DNA of 64,000 nt from positions 197,807-261,806 of IMG/VR virus record IMGVR_UViG_3300026097_000876; one strand, given 5' to 3'. Positions 33,240 to 51,855 of the stretch are shown here, in pieces. A program made the translations under genes and the position numbers. Below the pieces are notes generated by a model. It was not told the origin of the DNA. It did not search any database and worked only from the letters and a program-made list of their open reading frames with translations. The stretch's first letter is position 1, and every line of letters starts with the position of its first letter.

Positions 33240-33258
33240 CAACATATGGAAGATTAAA

Positions 33259-33930: not shown

Positions 33931-33935
33931 TGGTG

Positions 33936-33964
33936 TTGACAATTCATATTAATTAGTGTATAAT
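33936..33964 (+). promoter_or_regulatory. Consensus sigma70 promoter TTGACA-N17-TATAAT
   Basis: -35 at 33936-33941, -10 at 33959-33964; SD AGGA before the ATG at 33993. Confidence 0.85.
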
Positions 33965-33992
33965 ATAAGAAAATAAGTATAGGAAAATAAAA

Positions 33993-34829
33993 ATGTTTCT
34001 AACCCTTGAAGATTTAAAAGGTTCAGAATATCGTACAGTAGACTTTTATATGACAAAAAGTTGTAATAAGAGTTGCCATTATTGTACTGCATGGACTCTT
34101 GAAATGCGTAATCTTGATGTTGACATGGATTTTTTGCGTACTATTTTAGAAGGTCTTGCTCCTTATAAAACACGTATTTGTTTGCTCGGCGGTGAACCTG
34201 GACTTGTTAAGAACTTAAGAGAAGTTATTGCCGAAATTAAAAAGTATCCCAATCTAGTAGTACAGGTACTTTCTAACAGTCTTATACGTAAATTTTATCC
34301 AGAAGTATTAGAAGATCCTGAGATTATTTACATCGAACATTTAGTGTTGGACTTTTACGAAGATCGAATTGAAAAGTTAGGTAACTATGATTTCTTTGAA
34401 CCTAATGATCTAAACAATTATAATCTTATAATTGAAACACCTGGATACTTTGATTACAGAGACAAACATGATTTGTCTTATCTTATGCACAAAAATACAG
34501 AATTTAAAGAATATAATTCACGCTCTCCGGATTTCTTTTCAGATCATAAAATTGTACAAGCGCCAGAAATTGAAAGACGAGTATGTGCTAAGTTTCCGCA
34601 AGTTCCTGTGTTTGATTTTGAAATACAAAAAATTAGACATTGTAGCAGGAAAGTTATTAACGGTAGCCGTCAATTTGATGTTACTAAAGAAAATATTGAA
34701 AAGATGATGAACTACGAACTTTTTGAATTCGAAAACTATTGCAAAGGTTGTATGGATATTATTCCTCCGAGGCCAGTAGCACGTAGATTAGAAATATTAG
34801 AAAAAATAGCATTAGAAGATATCACATGA
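33993..34829 (+). CDS. Radical SAM protein with C-terminal twitch-like cysteines
   Basis: CNKSCHYC; LLGGEP; C-terminal VC...HC...YCKGC. Confidence 0.85.
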   Translation: MFLTLEDLKGSEYRTVDFYMTKSCNKSCHYCTAWTLEMRNLDVDMDFLRTILEGLAPYKTRICLLGGEPGLVKNLREVIAEIKKYPNLVVQVLSNSLIRKFYPEVLEDPEIIYIEHLVLDFYEDRIEKLGNYDFFEPNDLNNYNLIIETPGYFDYRDKHDLSYLMHKNTEFKEYNSRSPDFFSDHKIVQAPEIERRVCAKFPQVPVFDFEIQKIRHCSRKVINGSRQFDVTKENIEKMMNYELFEFENYCKGCMDIIPPRPVARRLEILEKIALEDIT

Positions 34830-36289
34830 AGTTTTATGCAGTAGCCTTAAATATGCACGATCATAATACATATGACGGTGTAACACACTATCAACTAGAA
34901 AGACACACCCGTGCTAAACATAATCTAAATTATAAAAATGTTCATGATCCAGAACCGAGTAAACGTTTTTTTGATAATTTTGTAAAGACTAATGATAAAG
35001 TACTTTGCTTTACTGTTTCTAATCTAGGACAAGAATTTGTATTAGACCGGATTGAAAAAAAATTCGGAAAAGACTTTTTAAACTTCAGACCTAGCCATAT
35101 CTGGGATTGTTATCATACCGATGATTTTTATTATATCGATCATCATCAAAGTCATGCTACCTATGCTCTTCTAAGTTCAGGATTTCCGGAAAGTGACATT
35201 CTTGCTATCGACGGCAGAGGTTGGCAATTTAATTGTATTTTTGTTAACAAAGAAGGAAGAATAAAAGATCTTACAGATGAATTATCTATTGGCGGACTTT
35301 GGAATAGGCTATCGCAAGATCTTGGTTTTGGATATTTAGGCGCAGGTAAAGTAATGGGTCTTGCTGGTTACGGTAAGTATGATCATAGGGTTCACGCTAT
35401 GTTAGAAGTATATCTCACTAATGATAATAACCTTCCTAACTGGTATAAAAAAATTATCGACAGCTGCAACAAAGAAGATATTGCTTTTACTCTACAATAT
35501 GTTACAGAAGAATTAATTAAAAAATATGTATATCCTCTCAAAACTAGTGACAATTTGTGTGTAGCAGGCGGAGTAGCATATAATGGCTACATGAATGAGG
35601 AATTTACTAAACATTATAAAAACGTACATGTACCGCCTGCTGTTGGTGACGAAGGTCAGGCAATAGGTACTTACATGCATGCCGAATATGTAGTAAACGG
35701 AAATGTACACATTCCTTGTGTATACTCTGGTGTTGAACATAAGTACACACTACCAGATACATTTGAAGATTTGAATATCCCTAAACTGGCACAACAAATA
35801 GCAGATGGCAAAATAGTAGGATGGTTCCAAGGAAAGAGTGAAAGTGGTAATAGAGCACTAGGCAATCGTAGTATACTTGCAGATCCACGCAATCCCGATA
35901 TTAAAGATATTATTAACAGTAAGATTAAACTACGTGAAGACTTTAGACCGTTTGCTCCTAGCGTACTAGAAGAACATTATACAGAATATTTTGATACTAA
36001 TCAGCCATCGCCTTATATGAGCAGGATTGTAAAAGTTAAAGGTAACATCATACCGGGCGTAACTCACGTAGACAGTACAGCAAGGATTCAAACTGTTAAT
36101 AAAACACAGAATCAAAAATTTTATGATTTAATTAACGAATTTTATAAAATTACAGGAGTTCCTATGTTACTTAACACAAGTTTTAACTGTCAAGAACCTA
36201 TTGTAGAAACTCCGCACGAAGCATATGAAACTTATAACAAAACTTCTTTGGATATTCTTGTTATTAATGATAAAGTGATTGAAAAATGA
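34826..36289 (+). CDS. Carbamoyltransferase (NodU/CmcH/TobZ family)
   Basis: HHQSHA; GKVMGLAGYG; AGGVAYN; GNRALGNRSILADPR; FRPFAP; HVDSTARIQ; LLNTSFN. Confidence 0.9.
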   Translation: MKFYAVALNMHDHNTYDGVTHYQLERHTRAKHNLNYKNVHDPEPSKRFFDNFVKTNDKVLCFTVSNLGQEFVLDRIEKKFGKDFLNFRPSHIWDCYHTDDFYYIDHHQSHATYALLSSGFPESDILAIDGRGWQFNCIFVNKEGRIKDLTDELSIGGLWNRLSQDLGFGYLGAGKVMGLAGYGKYDHRVHAMLEVYLTNDNNLPNWYKKIIDSCNKEDIAFTLQYVTEELIKKYVYPLKTSDNLCVAGGVAYNGYMNEEFTKHYKNVHVPPAVGDEGQAIGTYMHAEYVVNGNVHIPCVYSGVEHKYTLPDTFEDLNIPKLAQQIADGKIVGWFQGKSESGNRALGNRSILADPRNPDIKDIINSKIKLREDFRPFAPSVLEEHYTEYFDTNQPSPYMSRIVKVKGNIIPGVTHVDSTARIQTVNKTQNQKFYDLINEFYKITGVPMLLNTSFNCQEPIVETPHEAYETYNKTSLDILVINDKVIEK

Positions 36290-36891
36290 TAGACGAAATT
36301 ATTTTTAGAAATGTACTAAAAGAAATTAAACAAAATTCAGAATATGCTGACGATATTATTGATTCATTCAGTGACAATCAGTTTATTGCTAAACGCAAAG
36401 TTTTAGAATATGCTAATAGATTAAATATACTAGATAAAGATTCAGAAGTAATTATTTTTGGATCTTGGTACGGAAGTATTTTAATTCCTGGATTAGTTGA
36501 TAAAGTAAAAAAAATTAGTTGTATTGATATTGACAAACGAGTTTTACAAACTGCAAAAAATAGATTCTTCAAAGATTATACCAATATAGATTATATTGCA
36601 GGCAACGTATTTGATTTAGATCTCAAAAGATATCACACGGCTAATCTTTTTATAAACACGTCGTGCGAACATATGCCGTCGATGAAGGAATTTTTATACT
36701 GGCCTGACCAAACCCATTTTGTCTTCACAAGTAATGATATGTTCAACATCGAAGGACACATAAATTGTGTAAACAGTTTAGATGAATTTAAAGAACAATT
36801 GCCCGAACGTGCAGAAGTATTGTATGAAGAAGAAGTAGAGGATACCAGAGGCACACGTTATATACTAGTCGGAAAAATTAACGGTATTTAA
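36286..36891 (+). CDS. Class I SAM-dependent methyltransferase
   Basis: VIIFGSWYG motif I; CIDID; INTSCEH. Confidence 0.65.
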   Translation: MIDEIIFRNVLKEIKQNSEYADDIIDSFSDNQFIAKRKVLEYANRLNILDKDSEVIIFGSWYGSILIPGLVDKVKKISCIDIDKRVLQTAKNRFFKDYTNIDYIAGNVFDLDLKRYHTANLFINTSCEHMPSMKEFLYWPDQTHFVFTSNDMFNIEGHINCVNSLDEFKEQLPERAEVLYEEEVEDTRGTRYILVGKINGI

Positions 36892-38125
36892 TTCGTATAC
36901 TTCTTGTAAACTGATCTAATTTTTGATAAATTTCTTCTACAGTTTTGCCTAGTAGAATTAATTGTCCGTTTTGATGCCCTATACTTGCATTCCAATTGTC
37001 TGGTATTACACTCTTAGAAGTTAGTGTGCTACTAAAATGATGTACACTTTCATCTGCCTCAGGCCAGTCGATACTTTCAATTGTTCCGGGTGCAAATCTA
37101 AATTGTTTTCCTAAAGAATAATTAAACTGCGTATCATGTTTTTGCGTAAAGTCTGAAATATAGTCTTTCGAATTTAGCTTAACTAATTCTCGAGTTACAT
37201 TATAACCGTATATTTTATGAAAACTTGTTGCAGTATGACTACTACCAGGACGCAAATTAGTTTCAATTACGTTAATTACATTTAAATCTTTATCGTAAAA
37301 AAATTCTGTTCGTAGAGCACCGTTTTTGATTTCGAGAACATCTGTTAGTTGTTGTAAAATTGATAGTACTTCGTCTGTTAAGAATTTTGGATCACTAGGG
37401 AACAATGCTTCTTCGTAATAGAAATAAGGTAATCTTTCTTGCTCTAATTTGCTTTTTTGATCTCTAGCATAATGTGTGTAAGGTTTAATTATACCGTCTT
37501 GTACATAACAGTTTACACCACTAAAATAATCAGCATCTGTATATTGTTGAACTAGATAATAATCATATTTCTTATCTAAATTCCATCCATTTGAACGATC
37601 TTGATCATCCATGAATGATTTTAATTCAGCTGCATTATGTATTTGTTTAATTCCGTTGCTTCCTGCCCCGTAGTTAGGTTTTACAATACAGGGATACTCC
37701 AATGTTGATAAGTCTTTAATTTCGTCATATCGATAGGACCAGTCTGGTCTAGGCAAATTTTGATTTTCTAATAATTTATGCCATGCTTCTTTACTTGCAC
37801 AGTGTGTTGCAGCAACTTCTCCAATGCCCTTAAATCCCATACGAGTGTTTACACATGCCATAGCCATGCTAGCATCGTTAGTACATGGGTGTGTAACAGT
37901 CATACTAGCGCCACTAGTTTTTGCAAGATTTACTAATGCATCGATATCCATATAACTTATAATATGAAATTCGTCTATCATGTCTTTTACTGTGTCGTAA
38001 TAGTATTTGCTAGTAATATCCATAGGATGTGTTGCTACTATTTTATATCCAAGTGCTTGTGCTTCTCGCATATAAAGATAACTATCATCAAAAACACCAA
38101 TGTGTAATGCTACTTTATCCGCCAT
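36878..38125 (-). CDS. ATP-grasp ligase (L-amino-acid-ligase-like)
   Basis: PCIVKPNYGAGSNG; LVQQY; IETNLRPG; C-terminal small domain. Confidence 0.8.
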   Translation of the reverse strand: MADKVALHIGVFDDSYLYMREAQALGYKIVATHPMDITSKYYYDTVKDMIDEFHIISYMDIDALVNLAKTSGASMTVTHPCTNDASMAMACVNTRMGFKGIGEVAATHCASKEAWHKLLENQNLPRPDWSYRYDEIKDLSTLEYPCIVKPNYGAGSNGIKQIHNAAELKSFMDDQDRSNGWNLDKKYDYYLVQQYTDADYFSGVNCYVQDGIIKPYTHYARDQKSKLEQERLPYFYYEEALFPSDPKFLTDEVLSILQQLTDVLEIKNGALRTEFFYDKDLNVINVIETNLRPGSSHTATSFHKIYGYNVTRELVKLNSKDYISDFTQKHDTQFNYSLGKQFRFAPGTIESIDWPEADESVHHFSSTLTSKSVIPDNWNASIGHQNGQLILLGKTVEEIYQKLDQFTRSIRIKYR

Positions 38126-39569
38126 AAATATCTCTTATATCTTTGCCTGTAATTTTTTTATATCGTTCTACTAGAAATGTTGGTGAGTCTAACGCAAATT
38201 TGTAACCTAAATCTCTGCAATGATTGCGTAATCTAAACCATCTTTCAATTCTTACTTTTTGTGTGTTATCACCGATTTCCCATGCTCCTACATCGTCATA
38301 GTCTACACCCATTTCTTGAAACTGATCGAATAGCGGCGTGCCTGGATAGATTCGCATAGTTGCTCCGAGACTGACTTGAAAAACTGTTCCATCTTTTGCA
38401 TACTTGGCATTTCGAGTAAACATGTCCATAGTTTCTTGAAATTCTTCCTCGCCTTCGCCCGGGTATCCAATTAGCATCATCATTACAGTATCGATGCCGT
38501 TTTTAGAACATTGTTCCAAAGTGTAGTCAATATCAACAGCTCTAGCACCCTTTTTCATTGCATTAAGAACTTTTTGACTGCCGCTCTCGATACCTAACAG
38601 CATTCTAGTACATCCGCTCTTTGATAACTTTTCGTATATTTCTGGACCTTGCGAATTAGGAGGTCTCACAATAAATTGTCCTCCCCATTTTACACCATCT
38701 AAATTTTCTTCAATGAGTGTGTCCATCATTGCATCCATTTGGGGAATATTACCGTTTAGTAAACTATCTGTAAAATAAAACTCTTTTATTCCTGGATGCG
38801 TCTTAACTTGATGTATAATTTCTTTTGCAATAGTTACTCCGCTTTTACTAGTAAAAGATGGCCAGCGTTTGCCTACATCACAAAACTTACAACGTCTAAT
38901 ACACCCTCTACTTCCAGTTAAGTATAACAGATCTGTTCCTTTTGGATCTTCAAATGGATCTCTAAACAAATGACTATATTGTGACAAGTCATAATCTGTA
39001 TAATCAGCAAACGGAAGTGAATCTAACTCTTTCATCTGTATAGGAAACTTTCCGTTTATTCCTGGATAGTCTGTATTTCCGTTAAGCAGATGTAGTATAG
39101 GATTTTCTCCTTCTGCTTCCACATATGCATAAATTCTATCTTGTTTAAGATTAGTAGGCCCGTAATCAGGTGATGCACCCGGTCCTCCTAATATAACTTT
39201 AACTTCGGGCAATCTAATAAGTATTTCGTCTAAGAACAAGTCACACATTACAAGTTGCCAATGACTTAATAATGTTATACCAACAAACTTTGGATTATAA
39301 CCTGCAATTTTCTCTACAGCCTGTTCTACTAACGGAACAAATATATGTTTAACTTTTTCAAAATATTTCTTGTTAATTAGTGTTTGGTCGTTGTCTAGCC
39401 AAAGATGAGCATATTCGTCTTTTACAATATTCCAAAATTCTACATTAAAGTCAATACATTTACTAGTATAACCATGTTCTTCGACAACTGCCTTTAGTGC
39501 TGCTGGCCCAATAAGAGGGCTTTGTACTTCAAATTTTGGAATACTAATAAAAACAATATCTTTATTCAT
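38115..39569 (-). CDS. Cobalamin-binding radical SAM enzyme (class B methyltransferase-like)
   Basis: N-terminal B12 domain (FVGIT...ILGGP...EGE); GSRGCIRRCKFC; FTDS; GIESGS; GYPGE. Confidence 0.85.
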   Translation of the reverse strand: MNKDIVFISIPKFEVQSPLIGPAALKAVVEEHGYTSKCIDFNVEFWNIVKDEYAHLWLDNDQTLINKKYFEKVKHIFVPLVEQAVEKIAGYNPKFVGITLLSHWQLVMCDLFLDEILIRLPEVKVILGGPGASPDYGPTNLKQDRIYAYVEAEGENPILHLLNGNTDYPGINGKFPIQMKELDSLPFADYTDYDLSQYSHLFRDPFEDPKGTDLLYLTGSRGCIRRCKFCDVGKRWPSFTSKSGVTIAKEIIHQVKTHPGIKEFYFTDSLLNGNIPQMDAMMDTLIEENLDGVKWGGQFIVRPPNSQGPEIYEKLSKSGCTRMLLGIESGSQKVLNAMKKGARAVDIDYTLEQCSKNGIDTVMMMLIGYPGEGEEEFQETMDMFTRNAKYAKDGTVFQVSLGATMRIYPGTPLFDQFQEMGVDYDDVGAWEIGDNTQKVRIERWFRLRNHCRDLGYKFALDSPTFLVERYKKITGKDIRDIYGG

Positions 39570-40344
39570 AAGTTCGATTTACCCTTCCTAAGTATATGAG
39601 AACAGCATATACTATAGTAGTTATCACACTTACTGATAAGACACTTGGACTAATGATGTCAGTAACATAACTCCACATAATAATTGGAAGAGTTTGAGTA
39701 CTATGATCTAATAACAACAACGCTACAATAAACTCGTCAAAACTAGTAATAAACGCAAGAGAACATCCTGCAAGCAATCCGGGCAACATAACTGGAAGTT
39801 GTATATCTTTTAATATTTGAAAACTATTTGCACCGCATAGTCTAGCACTTTTTGCAATATTTTCATCATAGTTATTTAGACTACTTAGCGTCATTAAAAT
39901 TACATAAGGAACACATAAAACAGTATGTGCTATAATAAGATTGATAAAACTGTTAGTAAACCCTATATCATTAAAAAAGAAAATCCAGCCAAGGCCAATA
40001 ATGATACTCGGTATTACAATAGGACTGATTATTACACTTAGAACTATTCCGTTTCTATATTGGTTCAACCACAACGCCGCAGGAACAGATAGTAGTATAC
40101 AACTAATAACAGTATATGCTCCTACTTGAAAACTAGTTACAATACTTTTATACCACATAGGATCTGTAAATAATTGGTTATACCATTTCAAGCTGAACTC
40201 AAAATCAGAAATTTTAAAATAGTTTCCACCGTCAACGCTAAACAAAATAATAACCAACATAGGCATTAACAAATATAAGAACATGCCATAAGCAAATAAT
40301 CTAAGCACGGGCGTCTCCTTTAAAGTTAATACGATAATAAACAT
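39562..40344 (-). CDS. potC: Polyamine ABC transporter permease, PotC-like
   Basis: FSLKWY; IIAHT; SARLCGA EAA loop; FITSFDEF; QTLP. Confidence 0.8.
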   Translation of the reverse strand: MFIIVLTLKETPVLRLFAYGMFLYLLMPMLVIILFSVDGGNYFKISDFEFSLKWYNQLFTDPMWYKSIVTSFQVGAYTVISCILLSVPAALWLNQYRNGIVLSVIISPIVIPSIIIGLGWIFFFNDIGFTNSFINLIIAHTVLCVPYVILMTLSSLNNYDENIAKSARLCGANSFQILKDIQLPVMLPGLLAGCSLAFITSFDEFIVALLLLDHSTQTLPIIMWSYVTDIISPSVLSVSVITTIVYAVLIYLGRVNRTYE

Positions 40345-41287
40345 AAAACAACATTAAACTAGTTGATAGCATAATAACTGTTAGCGCACTTGCTAGGCCC
40401 CAGTTTAATGTATATTGAACTTGTCTAATTATTTGTTCTGTAACAAACAGGCCTTTACTTCCACCTAACAGACTTGGAGTAATATAGTATCCAGTAACAC
40501 TCATAAATGTTAGTATGGTGCTGTTTGCAATACCTTTGATTGTTTGCGGCAAATACACATATCTAAATGTTTGAAATTTATTAGCACCTGAAATTGTACT
40601 TACTTTAATTAAATCGTTATTAACATTTTTCATAGCAAGATATATAGGTAATACACTTAGTGGCAGTGCGATATATACACTGCCTATATAAATTGCTGTA
40701 ATTGTATTCATAAGATCGAAAGGTTGTAACAATAATATCCAACTAACTGTACGACTTAAGAAGCTACTAAACAGCGGAATCAACACAACAAATAGTGCAA
40801 TCTTAGCTGCTTTGCCTTTTAGTTTAGTAAGATAATATGCAAGAGGATACGCTACTACTAAGCAAATGGCTGTAATAATTGCACTAAGAAGATATGTCCT
40901 TCCTATAACTTTTAAGTATAAGTCGTTAAATGCACGTTTAAAATTAGCAAATGTATAAGGCTTTACTTCTTGTTCTATTACACTCCAAAATGCAGGGTCT
41001 TGCCATCCAGGGTGTTCTAAACCTTTTCTAAACATACTTCGTGTTTTGTGATAGTGATGATTAAGGTAGGTGATAGATCTACGACTGTCCTCACGGGCTA
41101 AGTCACTTTTTATAGCTTCAGTCCGGTCTCCGCCGTTAACTACGTAGTCGGTTATGTTTGGAAGATAACGTTCAACAGTTGTGTTGTAAACACTATTTTT
41201 AAGAATTTCACCTAGTGGAAGGAGAAAGAACACTGCTAGAAAAAATACTAGCGGTATAATCTTTCCATGTTTCGCAAACAAATTCAT
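40301..41287 (-). CDS. potB: Polyamine ABC transporter permease, PotB-like
   Basis: ICLVVAYPLAY; SFLSRTVSW; ISGA..FQTF.YVYLP; YYITPSLLGG; NWGLASAL. Confidence 0.8.
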   Translation of the reverse strand: MNLFAKHGKIIPLVFFLAVFFLLPLGEILKNSVYNTTVERYLPNITDYVVNGGDRTEAIKSDLAREDSRRSITYLNHHYHKTRSMFRKGLEHPGWQDPAFWSVIEQEVKPYTFANFKRAFNDLYLKVIGRTYLLSAIITAICLVVAYPLAYYLTKLKGKAAKIALFVVLIPLFSSFLSRTVSWILLLQPFDLMNTITAIYIGSVYIALPLSVLPIYLAMKNVNNDLIKVSTISGANKFQTFRYVYLPQTIKGIANSTILTFMSVTGYYITPSLLGGSKGLFVTEQIIRQVQYTLNWGLASALTVIMLSTSLMLFYVYYRINFKGDARA

Positions 41288-41951
41288 TTACAAAATCACT
41301 CCTAGGATTATCAAGAATTTCTGTAGGACTGCCTACTTGCTCTACTTTTCCTTGATTCATAATAACAATAGTGTCGCACATATTAAATGCTTCAGTGAAG
41401 TCGTGTGTGACGTACACTACTGTTGTATTTTTAAGTAGCTGTTTAATATCTTTTTGTAATTTAATTCTTAGCTTTAAGTCTAGCGATGCTAAAGGTTCGT
41501 CCATTAGTATAACATCTGGATTATATACTAATGCCCTTGCAATTGCAACTCGCTGTTGTTGCCCACCGCTTAATTGTTTAGGATATTTATCAGCATGTTC
41601 TTCCATTCCTATAACATTTAAAATATTAGATACAGCGGATGTATTCTTGCCTTTTACTCTCAATGGATATGCTATATTTTCATAAGCAGTCATATTAGGA
41701 AATAAACTAAAGTTTTGAAACACCATTCCTAGTGGTCTTTTATTACTACTTAGGCTAGTAATATCCAAACCGTTAACTATTACTTGTCCACAGTCTGGTG
41801 TTTCAAACCCTGTAATGCAATTAAGTAGGGTACTTTTGCCGCTGCCACTAGGTCCTAGAACAGCGACATTCGATCCAGAAGAAACATTAAAAGTTACATC
41901 ATCGAGAACTTTATCTCGAAATGTTTTGCTAATGTTCTTTATTTCTAGCAT
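41208..41951 (-). CDS. potA: ABC ATPase, PotA-like, lacking the C-terminal TOBE/regulatory domain
   Basis: Walker A GPSGSGKS; VFQNFSLFP; LSGGQQQRV; ILMDEP; VTHD; the core ends at NPRSDFVNEF. Confidence 0.85.
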   Translation of the reverse strand: MLEIKNISKTFRDKVLDDVTFNVSSGSNVAVLGPSGSGKSTLLNCITGFETPDCGQVIVNGLDITSLSSNKRPLGMVFQNFSLFPNMTAYENIAYPLRVKGKNTSAVSNILNVIGMEEHADKYPKQLSGGQQQRVAIARALVYNPDVILMDEPLASLDLKLRIKLQKDIKQLLKNTTVVYVTHDFTEAFNMCDTIVIMNQGKVEQVGSPTEILDNPRSDFVNEFVCETWKDYTASIFSSSVLSPSTR

Positions 41952-43036
41952 TAGTCTAAGAGCCAGGCTTCCCAGCGTTCATTGATGCGTTCGCCATTGT
42001 CAGCCCACCATGCGCCGTCACGTGGAATGCTACCAGTATAGTTATTAGGGTTAGTAACCATTTCGGCTTCCATGTCTGATCCAGTGTCTACCGAAGTCCA
42101 GTTGCCTGAATTTAAATCAATTGAACTCTTACGTGTAGGCGAGTAAGGAATAATACGACTAATTAGTGCTAGTGTTTCTGTACTAGTAGCATGTTGCAAA
42201 AACGCCTTTACTTCAGGAGTCATTTGTCCTTTTGCTACTACCCAAGGAGAAACTGTATAAATTTGTGCATCCCAAATTTGCTCAATGCTTTGTCCGTCTA
42301 CGTTCTTGGCTTTCCAAAAACGTCCATTATAGCTTGCTAAAATTTGTACTTGTCCTGCACTCAATTGTTGAATACCAGCGGCTGCTTTGTCCCACCATAC
42401 AATATGATCTTTAATAGTATCTAACTTAGCAAATGCACGATCGAGTCCTTCGTCAGTTGCTAGTACATCACGTACAATGTTTCGATCCACTCCATCGGCA
42501 ATCAGTGCCCATTCTAAGTTATTGTAAGGACGGCGTTGTAATCCTCGCTTTCCTGGAAACTGTTCAACATCAAATACATCGTAAATTGTTTGTGGTGCGT
42601 TGTTAGCGTATGTTTCTGGATCGTATCCAAACTGAATACTGTATACTGCCTGTGGTGCCACACAATCTTTTAGCATACCAGGAAGAAAGTCCTCACTAGG
42701 TAGTGTACCGTCTGGTGCAGGCAGCAACACATCGTCGTGATTAAAGTTTTCTACTAAACCGTCTTCGCATGCAATAGCAAGTGCTTCCTGAGGAATATCA
42801 ATTACATCATATGTAATGTTTCCTGTTTCAATTTGTGTACGCAATGCTGCTAGTGCAGAGTGTGCATTTTTGATAACGTTTACAGTTACATCTGGATTCT
42901 GCTCAATAAACGGATCAATTGCTGCTCTTTGTTGTGCTTCGCCCCATGCACCGCCATAATTTACAATATTTACAGTACTGTCAGCATATGCTGAACTTGC
43001 AACAAGTGCTAGAACTGTCATAAAGGTATATTTCAT
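41951..43036 (-). CDS. potD: Periplasmic polyamine-binding protein, PotD/PotF-like
   Basis: Signal peptide MKYTFMTVLALVASSAYA; YGGAWG.AQ; FPGKRGL; LEWALIADG; DRAFAKLD.IK..IVWW; SD AGGAG. Confidence 0.8.
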   Translation of the reverse strand: MKYTFMTVLALVASSAYADSTVNIVNYGGAWGEAQQRAAIDPFIEQNPDVTVNVIKNAHSALAALRTQIETGNITYDVIDIPQEALAIACEDGLVENFNHDDVLLPAPDGTLPSEDFLPGMLKDCVAPQAVYSIQFGYDPETYANNAPQTIYDVFDVEQFPGKRGLQRRPYNNLEWALIADGVDRNIVRDVLATDEGLDRAFAKLDTIKDHIVWWDKAAAGIQQLSAGQVQILASYNGRFWKAKNVDGQSIEQIWDAQIYTVSPWVVAKGQMTPEVKAFLQHATSTETLALISRIIPYSPTRKSSIDLNSGNWTSVDTGSDMEAEMVTNPNNYTGSIPRDGAWWADNGERINERWEAWLLD

Positions 43037-43060
43037 TTCATCTCCTGTAAGTCTTACTAT

Positions 43061-43095
43061 AGTAATTATCTACGTATATAACTTAGATATTTACT
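43061..43095 (-). promoter_or_regulatory. Imperfect inverted repeat in the potD leader containing TAAATA and the TATATACGTAG motif
   Basis: Arms 43061-43072 and 43084-43095 pair at 11/12; TAAATA at 43088-43093 (minus strand); motif at 43070-43080. Confidence 0.4.
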
Positions 43096-43110
43096 TCTGA
43101 CATACTAATA

Positions 43111-43139
43111 ATAATACTACAATCAGCTCTAGTAGTCAA
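43111..43139 (-). promoter_or_regulatory. sigma70-type promoter TTGACT-N17-TATTAT for the potD operon
   Basis: -35 at 43134-43139 and -10 at 43111-43116 on the minus strand. Confidence 0.6.
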
Positions 43140-43167
43140 CTGTTTTATCGAGCATATATAATATACA

Positions 43168-44022
43168 ATGTCATATAAAGTAACACATAATCACCATCTT
43201 AGCGTTCGCAAAACAACAGATTATATTGTAAAATTAGGTCGTTGTGAGAACATGCCTATGGATTTTAAATCTGAAGCATTACGAGCTGCTAAGTTAATAG
43301 CAAAAGAATCTAATAATATATGGATTAGTTACAGCGGCGGTATAGACAGTGAGTTTATTATTCAAGTGTTTCTTGAAGCAGGCATCCAATTTAGAGTTGC
43401 CACAATTGTTATGAAAGACGGATCTAACGATTACGATCTACAGCACAGTAGAAATTTTTGTAAACGTATGGGTATCAAGCTACACGAATTTGAAATTGAT
43501 TTAGAAGAGTTTTATAAAAATGATCTAGAAACATATGCTGTTGCAACTAATTGTATTAGTCCACAGTTTCCGGTGCATATGTGGTTATGGGATCAACTAG
43601 ATGGATTTATAGTTGCAGGCCACGGTGATCCAATCTTTAAACGTAAAGATTCTAGATGGTATCTTCAAATTCAAAAAAAAGAAGACAGCGTATTTAGATA
43701 TGCTCAGTGGAGAAATAGAAACATGGCTCCGGGATTTTACGTATATACTCCGGAACTTCTACTAAGTTTTATGCTAGAAAAAGAAGTAAGTAATATGTTT
43801 ATTGCTCCTAAGTTAGCAGGGTTAAGAGATATTGCACAAGTCAAACATCTGGTTTATTCTAAATATTACGATATGGTCGAAAGAGAAAAAAGAACTGGCT
43901 TTGAGTTAGTAGATAACTTAAACAATGAATATAAAATACATTTAGAAAATACAATACCCGGACATGGCGTATTTCTACAATCAGTAGAAGACCTATTACA
44001 TAGAATTTGGCCTAAACTATGA
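43168..44022 (+). CDS. PP-loop (N-type ATP pyrophosphatase) family protein
   Basis: WISYSGGIDSE PP-loop; no QueC-type C-terminal cysteine cluster. Confidence 0.65.
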   Translation: MSYKVTHNHHLSVRKTTDYIVKLGRCENMPMDFKSEALRAAKLIAKESNNIWISYSGGIDSEFIIQVFLEAGIQFRVATIVMKDGSNDYDLQHSRNFCKRMGIKLHEFEIDLEEFYKNDLETYAVATNCISPQFPVHMWLWDQLDGFIVAGHGDPIFKRKDSRWYLQIQKKEDSVFRYAQWRNRNMAPGFYVYTPELLLSFMLEKEVSNMFIAPKLAGLRDIAQVKHLVYSKYYDMVEREKRTGFELVDNLNNEYKIHLENTIPGHGVFLQSVEDLLHRIWPKL

Positions 44023-44468
44023 TTATTAAACAAGTAGATTTTGAAACAGTGTTACCTGCGTGGGAAAACAATCTTTGGCCTAATCGCAAAGATCCTATTA
44101 AACCTACAAATAATATTTGTTATCTAGGTGGAAGAGATAAAGATATTAATAATCAAACACCTGTATTTTTTGCCGTGTACGATAATAAAACTATAGTAGG
44201 TGTAAACAGCGGCTTTCCTACACTACACGGAGGATTTCGTAGTAGAGGTATTTGGGTTGATCCGGCATATAGAGAAAAAGGTGTTGGGGCAATGTTGCTA
44301 AATGCTGTAATTGATTATGCTCGAGAGAATGAATATTCTTATGCATGGAGTATGCCAAGACAAAGTGCTCTATCAGCATATACTAATGTAGGCTTTGAGC
44401 AAACAAGCGATTTTTTTGACGAAGGCGTAGAGTTTGGTCCTAACTGTTTTGTAAGGATTGATCTATGA
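44019..44468 (+). CDS. GNAT acetyltransferase
   Basis: RGIWVDPAYREKGVG motif A; YTNVGF. Confidence 0.85.
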   Translation: MIIKQVDFETVLPAWENNLWPNRKDPIKPTNNICYLGGRDKDINNQTPVFFAVYDNKTIVGVNSGFPTLHGGFRSRGIWVDPAYREKGVGAMLLNAVIDYARENEYSYAWSMPRQSALSAYTNVGFEQTSDFFDEGVEFGPNCFVRIDL

Positions 44469-45937
44469 CTGATGTAGTTTTAGTTACTTTACCTAAAATG
44501 GAAATTAGAGCACCCTTAATTGGCCCGGCTGCTCTTAAAAGTATATGCGAAGCAGATGGGTACTCTGTACATTGCGTTGACTTTAATATCGAACTATATC
44601 ATCAATTGCGAACACAAGTTCCTGAATGGTGGATTTATAATGATCAAACATTTATGCAAGACGATTTATTTGACGAAGCATGGACTACTATATTAGAACC
44701 TATAGTTCACAGCTGGTGTAAAAAACTACAAGACCTAAATCCTAAAGTAATTGGTGTTACAGTATTAAGCATGTGGACCGAACGTATCTGTAATAAGTTT
44801 TTGCAAACACTAGAATTATATTGTCCAGATACCCGTGTAGTATTAGGGGGACCGGGAACACAGCCAGCATATGGTCCAAAGATGCTAGAAGCAAAAAAAA
44901 TTGATGCATACATTACAGGCGAAGGCGAAGTTAGTTTTTTAGAATATCTTAGAGGCAACAAATATTATCCTGGAATAAATGGCAATCCTGCTGAACAGAT
45001 TGGAGATATGAATACATTACCGTTTCCTGACTATAGTGATTTTGATTTATCAAAATATAGCAGCACTTGGTGGGAACCTCACAAAGAGCCAACAGGGTGT
45101 AAATGGTTGTATATTACAGGCACTCGGGGGTGTATTAAGCGATGCACTTTTTGTAATGTAGGATCAATATGGCCAAAGTTTGTTAGCAAAACAGGTGAAA
45201 CTATTGCTAAAGAAATAAAACATTATATGGATACTACAGGAGTAACTCACTATTATTTTACTGACAGTTTACTCAATGGTAATGTAAAGAATCTAGAAGA
45301 AATGGTAGACGCTATTATTTCTTTAGGTATTAAGCCTACTATAAAAGGACAATGGATTGCTCGTGGTAAAGATTTAATTAATAGTGAGCTATGGAAAAAG
45401 ATGGGCAGAGCAGGTTTCAAACAACTCTTAGTGGGTATCGAAAGTGGAAGTTATAAAACACGCAACGAAATGAAAAAGGGTGTTAGAGAAGAAGATATAG
45501 AATATACATTTGAACAAGCAAGCAAAAACAAAATTAGATGTATACCGTTGCTTATGGTAGGATATCCAACAGAGACAGCAGAAGATTTTGAGGAAAATAT
45601 TAAATTTTGGACTAGGTATAAAAAATATAATGACAATGGTACTATTCTAAAACCTAGTGTGATGGCAACGAATATTTTACCAGACACTCCTCTACATCAT
45701 AAATTTACCGGAAACGGACTAGAGTATGACGATTTAGGTAACTGGGTATATAAAGACAACACTATGAAAGTTCGAATCGAACGCTGGTTTAGATATCGAG
45801 ACGAGGCACATCGCTTAGGTTATGAACTTACTTTAGATACTCCTAAACATCTCATAAGAGAATACAAGCGTATTACTGGAATAGATCTTAGTGAAGAATA
45901 CAAACTCAAAGATACAGAAGAAATATGGAATGATTGA
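44465..45937 (+). CDS. Cobalamin-binding radical SAM enzyme, paralogue of 38115
   Basis: PLIGPAALK; VLGGP; GTRGCIKRCTFC; FTDS; GIESGS; GYPTE. Confidence 0.85.
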   Translation: MTDVVLVTLPKMEIRAPLIGPAALKSICEADGYSVHCVDFNIELYHQLRTQVPEWWIYNDQTFMQDDLFDEAWTTILEPIVHSWCKKLQDLNPKVIGVTVLSMWTERICNKFLQTLELYCPDTRVVLGGPGTQPAYGPKMLEAKKIDAYITGEGEVSFLEYLRGNKYYPGINGNPAEQIGDMNTLPFPDYSDFDLSKYSSTWWEPHKEPTGCKWLYITGTRGCIKRCTFCNVGSIWPKFVSKTGETIAKEIKHYMDTTGVTHYYFTDSLLNGNVKNLEEMVDAIISLGIKPTIKGQWIARGKDLINSELWKKMGRAGFKQLLVGIESGSYKTRNEMKKGVREEDIEYTFEQASKNKIRCIPLLMVGYPTETAEDFEENIKFWTRYKKYNDNGTILKPSVMATNILPDTPLHHKFTGNGLEYDDLGNWVYKDNTMKVRIERWFRYRDEAHRLGYELTLDTPKHLIREYKRITGIDLSEEYKLKDTEEIWND

Positions 45938-45964
45938 TACATATTTAATAAAGGATTAAACAAT

Positions 45965-46567
45965 ATGATAAACACACTTTATAAAGTACCAATTTGGATA
46001 CAAGACAATACATTGCCGCAAGATAAATTAGATATGCTAGAACAAGCATGCTACGACAAGTGTCAACCATTGTCAGATTATCCAGATGAATTTAATCCTG
46101 ATATTTTTAAATTTTCTCGTTCTAACAAAATAAATGTTCATACGGAGCCTGAATTTAAAGAAGTTACTAACTTAATGTTAACAGCCGCAAGAAATATGAT
46201 GTTAGAAATGAGTTACACACAAGAACAGGCTCAGCGTCTTAGAATTGTTAACAGCTGGTTTGCAATATATAAAAATAAAGATAATCTACCTATGCATACA
46301 CACCGTGATAGTTTCTTTTCAGGAGCATATTATATTAAAGATGTTACAGATTGTAAATTACGATTTATTCATGACATCTATAGAAATACACCTTACCCAG
46401 AAGATTTACATAATGAATGGGGCAAAAATGTTACAGACTTTGATTGTAAAGACGGACGAATTATTATATTTCCTAGTGACTGTATACACGGAATTGATCA
46501 GCTTAATAGTAATAAGCCCGATAATGAACCTATTAAAGTTATGTTATCGTATAATTTTAATTTTTAA
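45965..46567 (+). CDS. 2OG-Fe(II) oxygenase-like protein (TIGR02466-type)
   Basis: HTHRDSFFSGAYY; IFPS..IHG; MLSYN. Confidence 0.7.
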   Translation: MINTLYKVPIWIQDNTLPQDKLDMLEQACYDKCQPLSDYPDEFNPDIFKFSRSNKINVHTEPEFKEVTNLMLTAARNMMLEMSYTQEQAQRLRIVNSWFAIYKNKDNLPMHTHRDSFFSGAYYIKDVTDCKLRFIHDIYRNTPYPEDLHNEWGKNVTDFDCKDGRIIIFPSDCIHGIDQLNSNKPDNEPIKVMLSYNFNF

Positions 46568-47058
46568 ACACAGGCAACAATATGAATTCGATCCTCAAAA
46601 CTTCCGTTTAATGCTAGGTGCTTTAATCTAGTATCTAACCAATATAAATGACCTACTGATTCCATTCTTAATATTTCTTCGTCTACTATAAACATACAAT
46701 TATTATTTGTAGTTACAGGAATATGCATTCGCGGGGTTGGATCTGTGTGATATGAATAACATTCTTTAGAGCGCAGTGTCATTACTCTAGTTCTATATAA
46801 ATTATTTTCTTTAATAATACTATTAATATATGGTATATCGTAGTAACATTCGGTAATATCTGTTTCTTCAAAATGTGTTTTAGCAGTTCTTTCTTTGTTT
46901 ATAGGATCAAACACATCAAAATCACCTCTCCATGTTTGTAGATTATTGTTAGAATTTATAGCGTAGTTAATACTTTCTAATTCACTAATAATCTTTTCAA
47001 CATCATATTTTTTGCCTGTTTTTATAAATTTATTCACGTACCTTTTCCCTTCGGACAT
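46564..47058 (-). CDS. 2OG-Fe(II) oxygenase (aspartyl beta-hydroxylase-like)
   Basis: YHTD HxD; RMHIP; HLALN; RIHIV. Confidence 0.7.
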   Translation of the reverse strand: MSEGKRYVNKFIKTGKKYDVEKIISELESINYAINSNNNLQTWRGDFDVFDPINKERTAKTHFEETDITECYYDIPYINSIIKENNLYRTRVMTLRSKECYSYHTDPTPRMHIPVTTNNNCMFIVDEEILRMESVGHLYWLDTRLKHLALNGSFEDRIHIVACV

Positions 47059-47486
47059 ACAGTTAATTCTTTTACTCTATACGGCTGGTCCAATACCCAT
47101 TCAATTATACCTACTACATATTCTAAATCCATTTTAGGAGTGTCAATGTCTGCTACTCGTTCGGTATCAAAAAAACCAAAATTTAAACATGTAGTATCGT
47201 AATAATTATCAAAAAGTTGGCTGTTTGCATCACGCAGAGCTTTCTTTTCTACGCCATATCTATATGTTTTTTTTCCTGGATGATAAATCCAGTCACTTGC
47301 TGAACTTCCTATATTAATTACTTTTTTGTTTTTTTCTATTGCTTTGTAGAGTAATTTTACTTGAGAAAATTCGTCATGCTTACAGTTAATAAACACATCG
47401 CATTCGTCTAACGATTCGCAATTGCCGTATTTTTCTTCAAGAACTTTTCCTAGACCTCGTCTTGTTCCTGTGATATAAAATTTCAT
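47034..47486 (-). CDS. Minimal short-chain dehydrogenase/reductase
   Basis: TGTRRGLG; INIGSS; YGVEK (YxxxK); only 150 aa. Confidence 0.7.
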   Translation of the reverse strand: MKFYITGTRRGLGKVLEEKYGNCESLDECDVFINCKHDEFSQVKLLYKAIEKNKKVINIGSSASDWIYHPGKKTYRYGVEKKALRDANSQLFDNYYDTTCLNFGFFDTERVADIDTPKMDLEYVVGIIEWVLDQPYRVKELTVCPKGKGT

Positions 47487-47513
47487 TAGTAAGTTCCTTG
47501 GCTATAACACTAT

Positions 47514-47521
47514 TATAAGTA
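47514..47521 (+). promoter_or_regulatory. Late-promoter variant TATAAGTA before speD
   Basis: 7/8 match to TATAAATA; SD AAAGGA and ATG at 47554. Confidence 0.45.
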
Positions 47522-47553
47522 TATATACACTTATATTAGAAAGGACATATATT

Positions 47554-47907
47554 ATGGCATGGGGCTATCATTTATTAGTGGACTGTAAGCAAGGCGACAT
47601 TCCTAGTATTACTAGCAAAGAAAATGTATCTACTTTTGTTAGGAAATTAGTAAAAGGAATTGACATGGTAGCATACGGTGATTTAATGATTGAACGCTTT
47701 GCTACACATGATCCTGATAAAGCCGGTATTAGTTTTTGTCAAATGATTGAAACGTCAAACATTACAGGACATTTCGTCGAACTTAATGGAAACTTTTATA
47801 TTGATGTTTTTAGTTGTAAACCTTATGATACTCATACAGTGCTGGATTTAATACAAGAATATTTTAATCCAGCATCTGTTAGCACAACTTTTATTAATAG
47901 AGATTAA
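47554..47907 (+). CDS. speD: Pyruvoyl-dependent S-adenosylmethionine decarboxylase proenzyme family
   Basis: GYHLLVDC; IETSNITGHF (self-cleavage serine); IDVFSC; 117 aa. Confidence 0.8.
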   Translation: MAWGYHLLVDCKQGDIPSITSKENVSTFVRKLVKGIDMVAYGDLMIERFATHDPDKAGISFCQMIETSNITGHFVELNGNFYIDVFSCKPYDTHTVLDLIQEYFNPASVSTTFINRD

Positions 47908-48899
47908 GCAACTAAGTTGACCCAAGCGCCGTTTTCGTAGCCTTGGAATTTATTGTCAGTTGTATTATAGATAACCATGCCATTGGCAGCAGTTAATGCA
48001 TCTCTTTCAGTAGTAGTTAAGCTACCAAACTGTACAAATCCTGTAAAAGAACCGTTTCCTCTAATGTCTAGTTCATTTTGAGGAAAGTATGTACCATAAG
48101 CAATACCTTCGTATGTAATTGTAGTAGTAGTTTCTTGTACCCAGTTACCTGGATTTCCAGTAGCAAAGTCGTTTTGTATAAACAAACCATATCTACCACC
48201 GACAAGTTTTAATCCTTGTCCTTTTAGACCAGTAGTTGTTCTACCAGAAAAAATAACTTCCCCATATGACTGATCTAAGTCGCCCATGTTGTCATACACA
48301 AGTTCTACTATAGCTCTATTACCATCCTCGCTGTAGAGTGTTTTACTTCCACTCATATTAGGAGCATGCAATGTACCGTTAATAGCATCTAATAAAAGAC
48401 TAGAATCATCAGCAAACACACTACCTTCAATATCACCGACAACATTTCCAAAGTGAGATCCTGTCGTATTACCGATTACGCTACCAGTAACACTACCAGT
48501 TACATCACCTATTAAGTCGCCTACAATATTACCAGAACTTATAACTGACGTAGTATTAACAGGCCCAAGTATTTGTCCATTGATTGCATCTACTAACAAT
48601 GTAGAATCGTCAGCGTAAATATTACCACGTAAGTCTAGTGCAGGATTGTCAGTAGGAGCCCAATTTGAACCATTATAAACAAGGATTTGATCTTTCTGCG
48701 GTGCTAATGCTTGCACATTGCCTAAATCTTCTAAATCTTGCGTAGATACTGAAACTGGAACACCGCCTACTGTTGCTCCATCGCCTACAAAAACTTCTTT
48801 AGAATCCGTAGTGTAAACGAGTTCACCTTCTGCAGGAGTAAATCCCGGACTGTCTTGTAATGCAGTCTTAGTTCCTCGTTTAATTCTTAACGTACCCAT
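47904..48899 (-). CDS. Fibre/decoration-like virion protein
   Basis: N-terminal IKRG...AEGELVYTTD..EVFVGDG; duplicated ADDSxLLxDAING; C-terminal LTTTERDAL...GMVIYNTT...FQGY. Confidence 0.7.
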   Translation of the reverse strand: MGTLRIKRGTKTALQDSPGFTPAEGELVYTTDSKEVFVGDGATVGGVPVSVSTQDLEDLGNVQALAPQKDQILVYNGSNWAPTDNPALDLRGNIYADDSTLLVDAINGQILGPVNTTSVISSGNIVGDLIGDVTGSVTGSVIGNTTGSHFGNVVGDIEGSVFADDSSLLLDAINGTLHAPNMSGSKTLYSEDGNRAIVELVYDNMGDLDQSYGEVIFSGRTTTGLKGQGLKLVGGRYGLFIQNDFATGNPGNWVQETTTTITYEGIAYGTYFPQNELDIRGNGSFTGFVQFGSLTTTERDALTAANGMVIYNTTDNKFQGYENGAWVNLVA

Positions 48900-51767: not shown

Positions 51768-51799
51768 ATTGCACCTTATTTGTTAATTTCTATAGTATA

Positions 51800-51828
51800 A
51801 CTATAACAGTATTTACAGAGTAAGTCAA
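51800..51828 (-). promoter_or_regulatory. sigma70-type promoter TTGACT-N17-TATAGT
   Basis: -35 at 51823-51828, -10 at 51800-51805. Confidence 0.65.
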
Positions 51829-51833
51829 GAGAT

Positions 51834-51854: not shown

Positions 51855-51855
51855 G

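What the first reader, a model, noticed from the sequence alone, without database searches (positions are those of the whole stretch)
41208..41951. PotA trimmed of its C-terminal regulatory domain, possibly feedback-insensitive
Seen: 247 aa; the ATPase core ends at NPRSDFVNEF, followed by a short tail overlapping potB by 80 nt. Established: cellular PotA is ~350-380 aa, and its C-terminal region mediates spermidine inhibition in E. coli. Inference: the deletion removes the brake on uptake during infection.
Basis: partly seen in the sequence, partly recalled or inferred. Interest (0 to 1): 0.65.

Follow-up and report, generated by a model that had tools for sequence, protein, structure and literature searches.

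The report
Phage ABC-importer ATPase without regulatory domain
A large marine-type phage carries a complete nutrient-import pump whose motor protein has lost the tail domain that normally lets such pumps be switched off from inside the cell. The loss is real and conserved, but what the pump imports, and whether losing the domain matters, is still unproven.

Summary
[quoted passage not shown] It is not an assembly artefact: the same 247-aa form occurs in about 10 relatives at 69-100% identity, and contigs from independent sequencing runs cross the junction without gaps. It is not a pseudogene either: all catalytic motifs are intact and core pN/pS is 0.21.

By sequence and fold it belongs to the PotA/CysA/MalK class, whose members carry a C-terminal TOBE domain. 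Cellular operons with the same binding-protein type have 361-370-aa ATPases with TOBE_2. The short forms make one well-supported group in the tree, which fits a single domain loss in a phage-associated cassette.

The last 14 or so residues are unconstrained out-of-frame read-through of the permease start. Only 'CETWKDYT' is conserved.

'Feedback-insensitive' is a reasonable inference, but 'spermidine' is not established. The binding protein is not a PotD/PotF orthologue, and characterised or named relatives bind or are named for GABA, opines or, by inference, glycine betaine/DMSP.

More notable is the conserved cassette around it: a complete importer together with radical-SAM, ATP-grasp, PP-loop and GNAT enzymes, with an AdoMetDC-like gene nearby.

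The parts
41208..41951 (-). PotA/CysA/MalK-class ABC ATPase, NBD only (247 aa). Walker A is at residues 33-41, Q-loop Q79, signature LSGGQQQR 127-134, Walker B/catalytic D151-E152, D-loop D158 and H-switch H183.
   Evidence: invariant motif columns. AF2 model pLDDT 88.8. Top Foldseek hit is E. coli PotA 8y5f_A, TMq 0.87, 40% id. Core pN/pS 0.21 across 6 relatives.
41208..41287 (-). 80-nt dual-coding overlap: ATPase residues 222-247 in one frame and permease residues 1-27 (including TM1) in the +1 frame.
   Evidence: The permease ATG, preceded by an in-frame stop, is conserved in 6/6 relatives. An AGGAG motif lies 9-10 nt upstream in 4/6. ATPase residues 226-233 (CETWKDYT) have pN=0. Residues 234-247 have pN/pS of about 3 in the ATPase frame against 0.36 in the permease frame. 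The distal tail has pLDDT 45-59.
41951..43036 (-). Periplasmic substrate-binding protein (361 aa, SBP_bac_8, Sec-type signal peptide); PotD-like subfamily with unknown ligand.
   Evidence: No NCBIfam hit. Best PDB match is 8jv1 (E 5e-53), then GABA and opine binders. Cellular relatives are 43-47% identical, from Alpha- and Gammaproteobacteria.
40301..41287 (-). PotB/PotH-like permease (328 aa, BPD_transp_1).
39562..40344 (-). PotC-like permease (260 aa, BPD_transp_1).
38115..39569 (-). B12-binding radical SAM enzyme (484 aa), same operon, 8-nt overlap with the permease gene.
   Evidence: Conserved downstream of the transporter in L003, L005, L018-L020 and L024.
36878..38125 (-). ATP-grasp ligase (415 aa), last gene of the operon.
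   Evidence: Conserved in all three cassette lineages.
43168..44022 (+). PP-loop (NAD-synthase-like) ATPase, 284 aa, transcribed divergently from the SBP gene; part of the cassette core.
44019..44468 (+). GNAT N-acetyltransferase (149 aa); part of the cassette core.
44465..45937 (+). Second B12-binding radical SAM enzyme (490 aa).
47554..47907 (+). AdoMet-decarboxylase-family (pyruvoyl) protein, 117 aa; recurs near the cassette in relatives.
   Evidence: Also in L005-L007, L018, L019, L023 (two copies plus an arginase-fold gene) and L024.

Best explanation
The ORF encodes the functional motor subunit of a phage-encoded, binding-protein-dependent type I ABC importer (SBP, NBD and two permeases in one translationally coupled operon).

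Shown. Its NBD belongs by sequence and fold to the PotA/CysA/MalK class, which normally ends in a TOBE-type regulatory domain. Here that domain is absent. The short architecture is fixed in a group of virus-type cassettes and evolves under purifying selection.

Inferred evolutionary path, in two steps. First, the TOBE domain was lost in the common ancestor of the '247-aa' and '240-254-aa' lineages. Second, in the 247-aa lineage a further small deletion brought the permease start codon into ATPase codon 222/223. The ATPase now terminates by reading about 25 codons of the permease gene out of frame. Of that overprinted tail, only the first eight residues (CETWKDYT, which extend the last NBD helix) are conserved. 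The rest is an unconstrained, probably disordered by-product.

Inferred mechanistic consequence. The pump keeps ATP binding and hydrolysis and coupling-helix docking, as in NBD-only importers such as ArtP/GlnQ. It cannot receive any signal that acts through a C-terminal domain: trans-inhibition by accumulated substrate (as in MetN and ModC, and as proposed for PotA) or protein regulators (as for MalK). Uptake in the infected cell would then be governed only by expression and by the binding protein.

Open. The cargo is an amine-type solute that has not been identified. Linkage to AdoMetDC-like, GNAT, ATP-grasp and PP-loop genes points towards polyamine-like chemistry, but glycine betaine/DMSP, GABA or opine-like ligands fit the SBP family equally well.
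For: ORF, motifs and missing domain.

Fold: the AF2 model is a complete NBD. Its best Foldseek hit is the E. coli PotA NBD (TMq 0.87, TMt 0.60). NBD-only ArtP-type proteins match over their full length (TMt 0.88).

Class assignment: HMM scores to RD-bearing families (PhnT2 282, PotA 256, WtpC 243, UgpC 238 bits) exceed those to RD-less families (GlnQ 201, PstB 163).

Conservation: 10 relatives of 247 aa (one of 233 aa) at 69-100% id. Core pN/pS is 0.21. The same operon occurs in L005-7 and L018-21.

Single origin: the short proteins form one bipartition, SH-aLRT 99.

Cellular counterparts with TOBE_2: L022 (370 aa) and L082 (361 aa). A related cassette has TOBE_2: L023.

Overlap anatomy and selection by frame.

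No assembly error.

Precedents for regulation through C-terminal domains: PMC10710835 (MetNI, ModBC). PMC11414716 reports that spermidine lowers PotABC ATPase activity and proposes binding to the regulatory domain.
Against: No functional data exist for this protein or any close relative. The tree is unrooted, so 'loss' rests on class membership and parsimony, not on a nested position. The short group sits on a long branch and is not resolved as sister to the ATPases that travel with the orthologous SBP type (L022/L023). A TOBE-bearing ATPase persists in a related cassette (L023), so the domain is not obviously harmful in this setting. The substrate is unknown, so nothing shows that the ancestral domain was inhibitory. 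pN=0 for CETWKDYT rests on only two independent substitutions. The virus record is only about 73% complete, so a trans-acting partner domain encoded elsewhere cannot be excluded.
Confidence: 0.62

Rival explanations
1. Neutral streamlining. The TOBE domain was dispensable baggage and was lost through the deletion bias of phage genomes. The transporter behaves like its full-length relatives, and the loss has no regulatory meaning.
For: Many type I importers work with NBD-only ATPases; ArtP-type proteins match the model over their full length. The gene junctions of the operon are compact or overlapping. The distal tail is plainly a by-product. A sister-type cassette retains TOBE, so both states appear viable.
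Against: In every characterised case these C-terminal domains have a regulatory role: MetN, ModC and MalK, and this is proposed for PotA. The short state has stayed fixed through divergence to about 50% identity, with no regain.
Confidence: 0.25
2. One reading: a spermidine/putrescine importer (true PotABCD) made insensitive to spermidine feedback, so that the infected cell is flooded with polyamine.
For: The NBD's best structural match is E. coli PotA. The permeases' best HMMs are PotB and PotC. An AdoMetDC-family gene, and in L023 an arginase-fold gene, recur next to the cassette. Phages are known to need and manipulate spermidine (PMC9992855). Spermidine lowers PotABC ATPase activity.
Against: The SBP, which sets specificity, hits no NCBIfam PotD/PotF model. 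Its solved relatives include GABA and opine binders, and E. coli PotD/PotF are not among the hits at E<=1e-3. A SAR11 'potD' SBP binds glycine betaine/DMSP, not polyamines (PMC11485210); its membership of this SBP family is my inference. All transporter subunits score below the equivalog cut-offs. No spermidine synthase is found in the record.
Confidence: 0.2
3. Ancestrally short: the protein descends from an NBD-only ATPase family and never had a TOBE domain.
For: The midpoint root falls between the short group and all TOBE-bearing hits. Its size equals that of GlnQ/ArtP-type NBDs.
Against: HMM scores favour RD-bearing families by 50-80 bits over NBD-only families. The start of the NBD-TOBE linker motif (F-I/V-G-E-T/N) is still recognisable as F-V-C-E-T. 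Every nearest neighbour that is not a fragment has TOBE_2. The partner SBP and permeases belong to systems whose cellular versions use TOBE ATPases.
Confidence: 0.08
4. Artefact or decay: an assembly deletion, a frameshift or a dying gene.
For: The long out-of-frame overlap with the next gene looks superficially like a frameshift.
Against: Independent assemblies and runs agree without indels. The length is identical in relatives down to 69% id. Core pN/pS is 0.21. All catalytic motifs are intact. No TOBE remnant is found in any frame.
Confidence: 0.02

Closest known systems
E. coli PotA (spermidine-preferential importer PotD-PotABC; PDB 8Y5F/8ZX1)
   Same: NBD sequence (about 40% id) and fold (TMq 0.87, rmsd 1.5 A). 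It works with two BPD_transp_1 permeases whose best HMMs are PotB and PotC, and with a periplasmic SBP.
   Different: It lacks the whole C-terminal regulatory (TOBE) domain, roughly residues 251-378 of PotA. It scores far below the PotA equivalog cut-off (256 vs 482 bits). The partner SBP is not a PotD orthologue. The gene order is SBP-ATPase-permeases, not potABCD.
Cellular 'PotD-like' importers of marine Proteobacteria (Nitrincola-type operon L022; Pelagibacteraceae operon L082, probably the SAR11_1336 osmolyte system)
   Same: Same SBP subfamily (45% and 35% id to the phage SBP) and the same four-component type I importer.
   Different: The cellular ATPases are 361-370 aa with TOBE_2, the gene order is ATPase-SBP-permease-permease, and no radical-SAM, ATP-grasp, PP-loop or GNAT genes are attached. 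That L082 is the orthologue of SAR11_1336 is inferred, not shown.
NBD-only ATPases of polar amino-acid importers (ArtP/GlnQ/HisP type; PDB 4YMS, 2OLJ, 4U00)
   Same: Same size and domain content. The model matches over the full length of both proteins (TMq 0.85-0.86, TMt 0.86-0.88). These show that an RD-less NBD can drive a type I importer.
   Different: Sequence affiliation is weaker (GlnQ 201 bits vs 256-282 for PotA/PhnT2). The permease and SBP families differ.
Trans-inhibited importers MetNI and ModBC, and MalK
   Same: Same overall class of type I importer, in which a C-terminal domain on the NBD is the regulatory input (PMC10710835). They provide the logic for 'no domain, no brake'.
   Different: Those domains are present and ligand-binding there. 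Here the domain is absent, and the ancestral ligand, if there was one, is unknown.
Phage-encoded polyamine metabolism (AdoMetDC/speD homologues, spermidine N-acetyltransferases; Li et al. 2023, PMC9992855)
   Same: An AdoMetDC-family gene and a small GNAT lie in or near the cassette.
   Different: A term search of that survey found no mention of transport, uptake or PotD. The GNAT here matches no SpeG model. The enzymatic roles are untested.

Membership tests
ABC transporter nucleotide-binding domain (PF00005) | Walker A, Q-loop, LSGGQ signature, Walker B with catalytic Glu, D-loop and H-switch all present | tested here: met
   GPSGSGKST 33-41, Q79, LSGGQQQR 127-134, D151-E152, D158 and H183 are invariant in alignments. 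PF00005 E 6.6e-38.
PotA, spermidine/putrescine import ATP-binding protein (NF006987 / TIGR01187) | Whole-protein score above the curated cut-off | tested here: not met
   256.3 bits vs cut-off 482 (NF006987) and 255 vs 355.6 (TIGR01187). Only profile positions 18-251/378 are matched.
PotA, spermidine/putrescine import ATP-binding protein (NF006987 / TIGR01187) | C-terminal TOBE-type regulatory domain | tested here: not met
   No PF08402 in the protein or in any frame of the 262-kb record.
PotA, spermidine/putrescine import ATP-binding protein (NF006987 / TIGR01187) | Operates with a PotD/PotF-orthologous polyamine-binding protein | tested here: not met
   The SBP has no NCBIfam hit at E<=1e-3. 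E. coli PotD/PotF are not among its PDB matches at E<=1e-3; the nearest are 8jv1, GABA and opine binders.
PotA, spermidine/putrescine import ATP-binding protein (NF006987 / TIGR01187) | ATPase inhibited by spermidine | not testable with these tools
   Needs a biochemical assay. For E. coli see PMC11414716.
PotA/CysA/MalK class of importer NBDs (TOBE-bearing class) | NBD sequence and fold closest to this class rather than to NBD-only classes | tested here: met
   HMM scores are 282-225 bits for PhnT2, PotA, CysA, WtpC, UgpC and FbpC against 201 for GlnQ. The top 25 Foldseek hits are all from this class. The nearest full-length homologues all carry PF08402.
Type I SBP-dependent ABC importer (complete system) | SBP with signal peptide, two BPD_transp_1 permeases and an NBD encoded together | tested here: met
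   Genes at 43036..39562 (-) are contiguous or overlapping. The same set occurs in relatives.
NBD-only importer ATPases (GlnQ/HisP/ArtP type) | Orthology to polar amino-acid transporter ATPases | tested here: not met
   GlnQ scores 200.9 bits vs cut-off 379. The partner permeases and SBP are of PotBC / SBP_bac_8 type. The protein resembles these ATPases in architecture only.

The most novel reading that the evidence does not exclude
The truncated ATPase is one adapted part of a previously undescribed, virus-specific 'import-and-modify' module. The module comprises a deregulated ABC importer hard-wired to B12-radical-SAM, ATP-grasp, PP-loop and GNAT enzymes, with an AdoMetDC-like gene nearby. 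Large marine phages would use it to pull a specific amine (a polyamine or related compound) from seawater and convert it into a phage-specific product. On this reading, removal of the TOBE domain was selected so that uptake continues regardless of the cell's own homeostatic signal.
Probability: 0.2. Interest if true: 0.75.

Novelty: new variant of a known kind. Interest (0 to 1): 0.42.

Why it matters
If the inference holds, this is a natural experiment. A virus would have kept the engine of a host-type nutrient pump and discarded its off-switch, a simple way to override host homeostasis. That can be tested directly with the TOBE-bearing relatives found here (L022, L023) as controls.

It also flags a conserved phage cassette that couples a complete binding-protein-dependent importer to unusual tailoring enzymes. 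A term search of the main survey of viral polyamine metabolism found no mention of transport (PMC9992855).

On its own, though, an NBD-only ABC ATPase is common biology, and the 'spermidine' label rests on annotation transfer. That transfer is known to fail at least once, for the SAR11 'potD' protein (PMC11485210), which I infer belongs to this SBP family.

Tried and rejected
1. Phage GenBank collection: no close DNA or protein relatives. The hits at 46% id or less are generic ABC ATPases, many in records that look like bacterial contamination.
2. IMG/VR scans: only one further contig, 100% identical. The 45% hits were not followed up.
3. Short ATPases P0038, P0067 and P0113 sit beside near-identical full-length proteins in the tree and are taken to be fragments.
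4. Gene-caller starts for the permease in L018/L019 (no overlap) were rejected. The ATG, the upstream stop and the TM1-coding sequence are conserved at the overlapping position in all six relatives.
5. Origin and ligand of PDB 8jv1 were not found in the paper library. It is not from the SAR11 SBP study.
6. The promoter/terminator scan gave no more sites than shuffled sequence. One -35/-10-like site lies upstream of the SBP gene, but it is not evidence.
7. A search for a cellular source of the cassette using the ATP-grasp protein found only one full-length relative (30% id) among the species genomes searched, in a Gracilibacteria MAG contig that has the PP-loop gene but no transporter.
8. No spermidine synthase was found in the record.
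9. The word search already returned both short and full-length relatives.
10. Complex prediction was not run. NBD-permease docking is not the open question, and no binding claim rests on it.
11. No alternative genetic code was used.
Full report
**1. What is there**

The window is the last 64 kb of a 261,806-bp linear IMG/VR virus record, estimated about 73% complete. GC is about 35%. It carries tail-fibre-like genes, a 5'-3' exonuclease and a 4,732-aa open frame, so it is a large tailed phage.

On the minus strand, 43036 to 36878 holds six contiguous or overlapping genes:
- a periplasmic substrate-binding protein (SBP): 361 aa, SBP_bac_8, Sec-type signal peptide;
- the 247-aa ATPase in question (41208-41951);
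- a PotB/PotH-like permease (328 aa);
- a PotC-like permease (260 aa);
- a B12-binding radical-SAM enzyme (484 aa);
- an ATP-grasp ligase (415 aa).

Transcribed divergently from the SBP gene are a PP-loop ATPase, a GNAT acetyltransferase, a second B12-radical-SAM enzyme and a 2OG-Fe(II) oxygenase. An AdoMet-decarboxylase-family gene lies at 47554-47907.

**2.

- The ATPase has every catalytic motif of an ABC nucleotide-binding domain (NBD).
- HMMs of PotA, PhnT2, CysA, WtpC, UgpC and MalK match it only over their first 235-250 positions or so, out of 340-380.
- No TOBE domain is found in the protein, or in any frame of the whole record.
- The AlphaFold model (pLDDT 88.8) is a complete NBD. Its last helix (219-238) fades into a low-confidence end: pLDDT 59 for 231-240 and 45 for 241-247.
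- The best structural match is the NBD of E. coli PotA (8y5f_A: TMq 0.87, TMt 0.60, 40% id). NBD-only ATPases such as ArtP match over the full length of both proteins.

**3. It is neither an artefact nor a dying gene**

- A second IMG/VR contig carries an identical copy.
- The word search found ten proteins at 69-100% identity. All are 247 aa, except one of 233 aa that begins later at the N-terminus.
- Contigs from independent sequencing studies cross the ATPase-end/permease-start junction with substitutions but no gaps: X3 record 17 and X6 record 24.
- Across six relatives, the NBD core has pN/pS 0.21.

**4. The tail and the overlap**

- The permease ATG sits at ATPase codon 222/223. In all six relatives it is preceded by an in-frame stop, and in four by an AGGAG motif 9-10 nt upstream. 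The encoded N-terminus contains TM1 and is well conserved. The 80-nt overlap is therefore real and conserved. Gene callers that placed the permease start downstream in two relatives are probably wrong.
- Frame-specific counts split the tail in two. For ATPase residues 226-233 (CETWKDYT), all differences are synonymous in the ATPase frame (pN=0), although this rests on only two independent substitutions. For residues 234-247, pN/pS is about 3 in the ATPase frame and 0.36 in the permease frame. The distal tail is therefore a hitch-hiking, out-of-frame read-through of the permease gene.
- The stop codon varies (TAG, TGA, TAA) at a fixed position (output).
- A sister lineage (P0011-13, P0016, L024; 49-54% id; 240-254 aa) is equally short. 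It ends in a different conserved segment (…SGLQHIQTLSQVIQ) and overlaps the permease gene by only 4 nt. I infer two steps: TOBE loss first, then a second small deletion in the 247-aa lineage that created the overprinted tail.

**5. Is it 'trimmed' relative to cellular homologues?**

Yes, as far as the data reach.
- After the two short lineages, every hit that is not a fragment is 324-386 aa, and most are flagged PF08402 (TOBE_2). Three other short hits are near-identical to full-length proteins and are taken as fragments.
- In an NBD-only tree the two short lineages form one bipartition (SH-aLRT 99) against all TOBE-bearing proteins.
- The SBP's closest cellular relatives (43-47% id) are from Alpha- and Gammaproteobacteria. 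In a Nitrincola-type operon the accompanying ATPase is 370 aa with TOBE_2. In a Pelagibacteraceae genome it is 361 aa with TOBE_2.
- A 104-kb phage-like contig (L023) has the same cassette core but a 326-aa ATPase with a weak TOBE_2 match. That ATPase groups with the Nitrincola-type ATPase.
- The tree is unrooted, so 'loss' rests on class membership and on the residual linker motif F-V-C-E-T, not on nesting. The HMM scores to RD-bearing families are 50-80 bits higher than to GlnQ-type families.

**6. What it imports is open**

- The permeases' best models are PotB and PotC, and the ATPase's are PhnT2 and PotA. All score far below the equivalog cut-offs.
- The SBP, which determines specificity, hits no NCBIfam model.
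- Among solved structures the SBP matches 8jv1 (named 'spermidine/putrescine-binding', ligand unknown to me), then a GABA sensor scaffold, mannopine- and agropine-binding proteins and 4eq7. E. coli PotD/PotF are not among the hits at E<=1e-3.
- Clifton et al. [quoted passage not shown] The Pelagibacteraceae homologue found here (35% id) is probably that system, but this is inferred.
- In favour of polyamine-type chemistry, an AdoMetDC-family gene recurs next to the cassette in all three lineages, and L023 adds a second copy and an arginase-fold gene. Such phage genes are known polyamine enzymes (PMC9992855). No spermidine synthase is present in the record.

**7. How it most likely works**

Shown: this is a complete type I importer with an intact, conserved NBD-only motor.

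From established knowledge:
- C-terminal domains on importer NBDs are the route for trans-inhibition in MetNI and ModBC (PMC10710835).
- In MalK the C-terminal domain is the site of protein-mediated control (my knowledge, not checked here).
- For PotA, spermidine lowers PotABC ATPase activity, and binding to the acidic regulatory domain has been proposed but 'requires further investigation' (PMC11414716).
- From memory only, Kashiwagi et al. 2002 (J Biol Chem 277:24212) assigned spermidine inhibition to residues 251-378. I could not read that paper here.

Inferred: without the domain, the phage pump cannot be throttled through this route. Whether that was selected or is neutral streamlining cannot be decided from sequence.

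**8. The cassette**

- A core of SBP, PP-loop ATPase, ABC ATPase, two permeases, ATP-grasp and GNAT is shared by the window, L024 and L023 at 35-66% identity. B12-radical-SAM genes are shared by the window and L024 only.
- Outside the cassette, L023 shares nothing with this phage record at E<1e-5.
- The ATP-grasp protein has only one full-length relative (30% id) among the species genomes searched. It lies in a Gracilibacteria MAG contig that also has the PP-loop gene but no transporter.
- The cassette therefore looks virus-associated, and its chemistry is unknown. This is the more unusual feature of the locus.

**9. Verdict**

The domain loss is real, derived, old and conserved. 'Feedback-insensitive' is a fair but untested inference, and 'spermidine' is not established.

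NBD-only ABC ATPases are commonplace, so the finding taken alone is a new variant of a known kind, of moderate interest. The linked import-and-modify cassette deserves its own follow-up.

Noticed in passing
window 1-14199 (+): A single open frame of 4,732 aa that runs off the window's 5' end (4,694 aa from the first ATG). It is followed by three ORFs (14831-20264) that share an N-terminal virion-protein module (phrog_15511/14394) and tail-fibre-like C-termini.
   Followed up: partly
window 47904-48899 (-): A 331-aa protein with an N-terminal Mtd_N (major tropism determinant) domain and a tail-fibre-like C-terminus, directly abutting the AdoMetDC-like gene. It could be a receptor-binding protein. 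No diversity-generating retroelement was looked for.
   Followed up: no
window 36878-47907; L023, L024, L005, L018, L019: A conserved 'import-and-modify' cassette: SBP, PP-loop ATPase, ABC ATPase, two permeases, ATP-grasp and GNAT, with or without B12-radical-SAM enzymes, 2OG oxygenases and an AdoMetDC-like gene. It is shared by three divergent lineages of virus-type contigs. The ATP-grasp + PP-loop pair also occurs without the transporter in a Gracilibacteria MAG contig (L025:9001-11119).
   Followed up: partly
L018:6901-7515, L019:6768-7382, L021:107-721: In three relatives a 204-aa 2OG-Fe(II) oxygenase gene is inserted between the SBP and ATPase genes. In the window and L005 these two genes overlap by 1 nt, so the operon is being remodelled by gene-sized insertions and deletions.
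   Followed up: no
L023:1370-3005: The phage-like 104-kb contig carries two AdoMetDC-family genes flanking an arginase-fold gene, about 7 kb from its TOBE-bearing version of the transporter. This looks like a putrescine/agmatine-type module like those described for marine phages.
   Followed up: no
window 50451-52944 (-): Adjacent DUF2201 metallopeptidase/VWA-like protein (438 aa; PHROG annotation 'HNH endonuclease' looks doubtful) and a MoxR-like AAA ATPase (362 aa). This pair is a recurring two-gene module of unknown role in phages.
   Followed up: no
window 21587-36891 (+): Upstream of the cassette lies a long run of same-strand biosynthetic-looking genes, including a carbamoyltransferase (34826-36289), a radical-SAM protein (33993-34829) and a methyltransferase-like ORF. 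Relatives also carry a DegT-type aminotransferase here. The whole 21-47 kb region looks like one metabolic island.
   Followed up: partly
sequencing runs: The run holding the exact sequence (X1, possibly the source) is labelled 'soil metagenome'. All partial holders are marine, estuary or plankton metagenomes, so the habitat label of the source sample may be loose.
   Followed up: no
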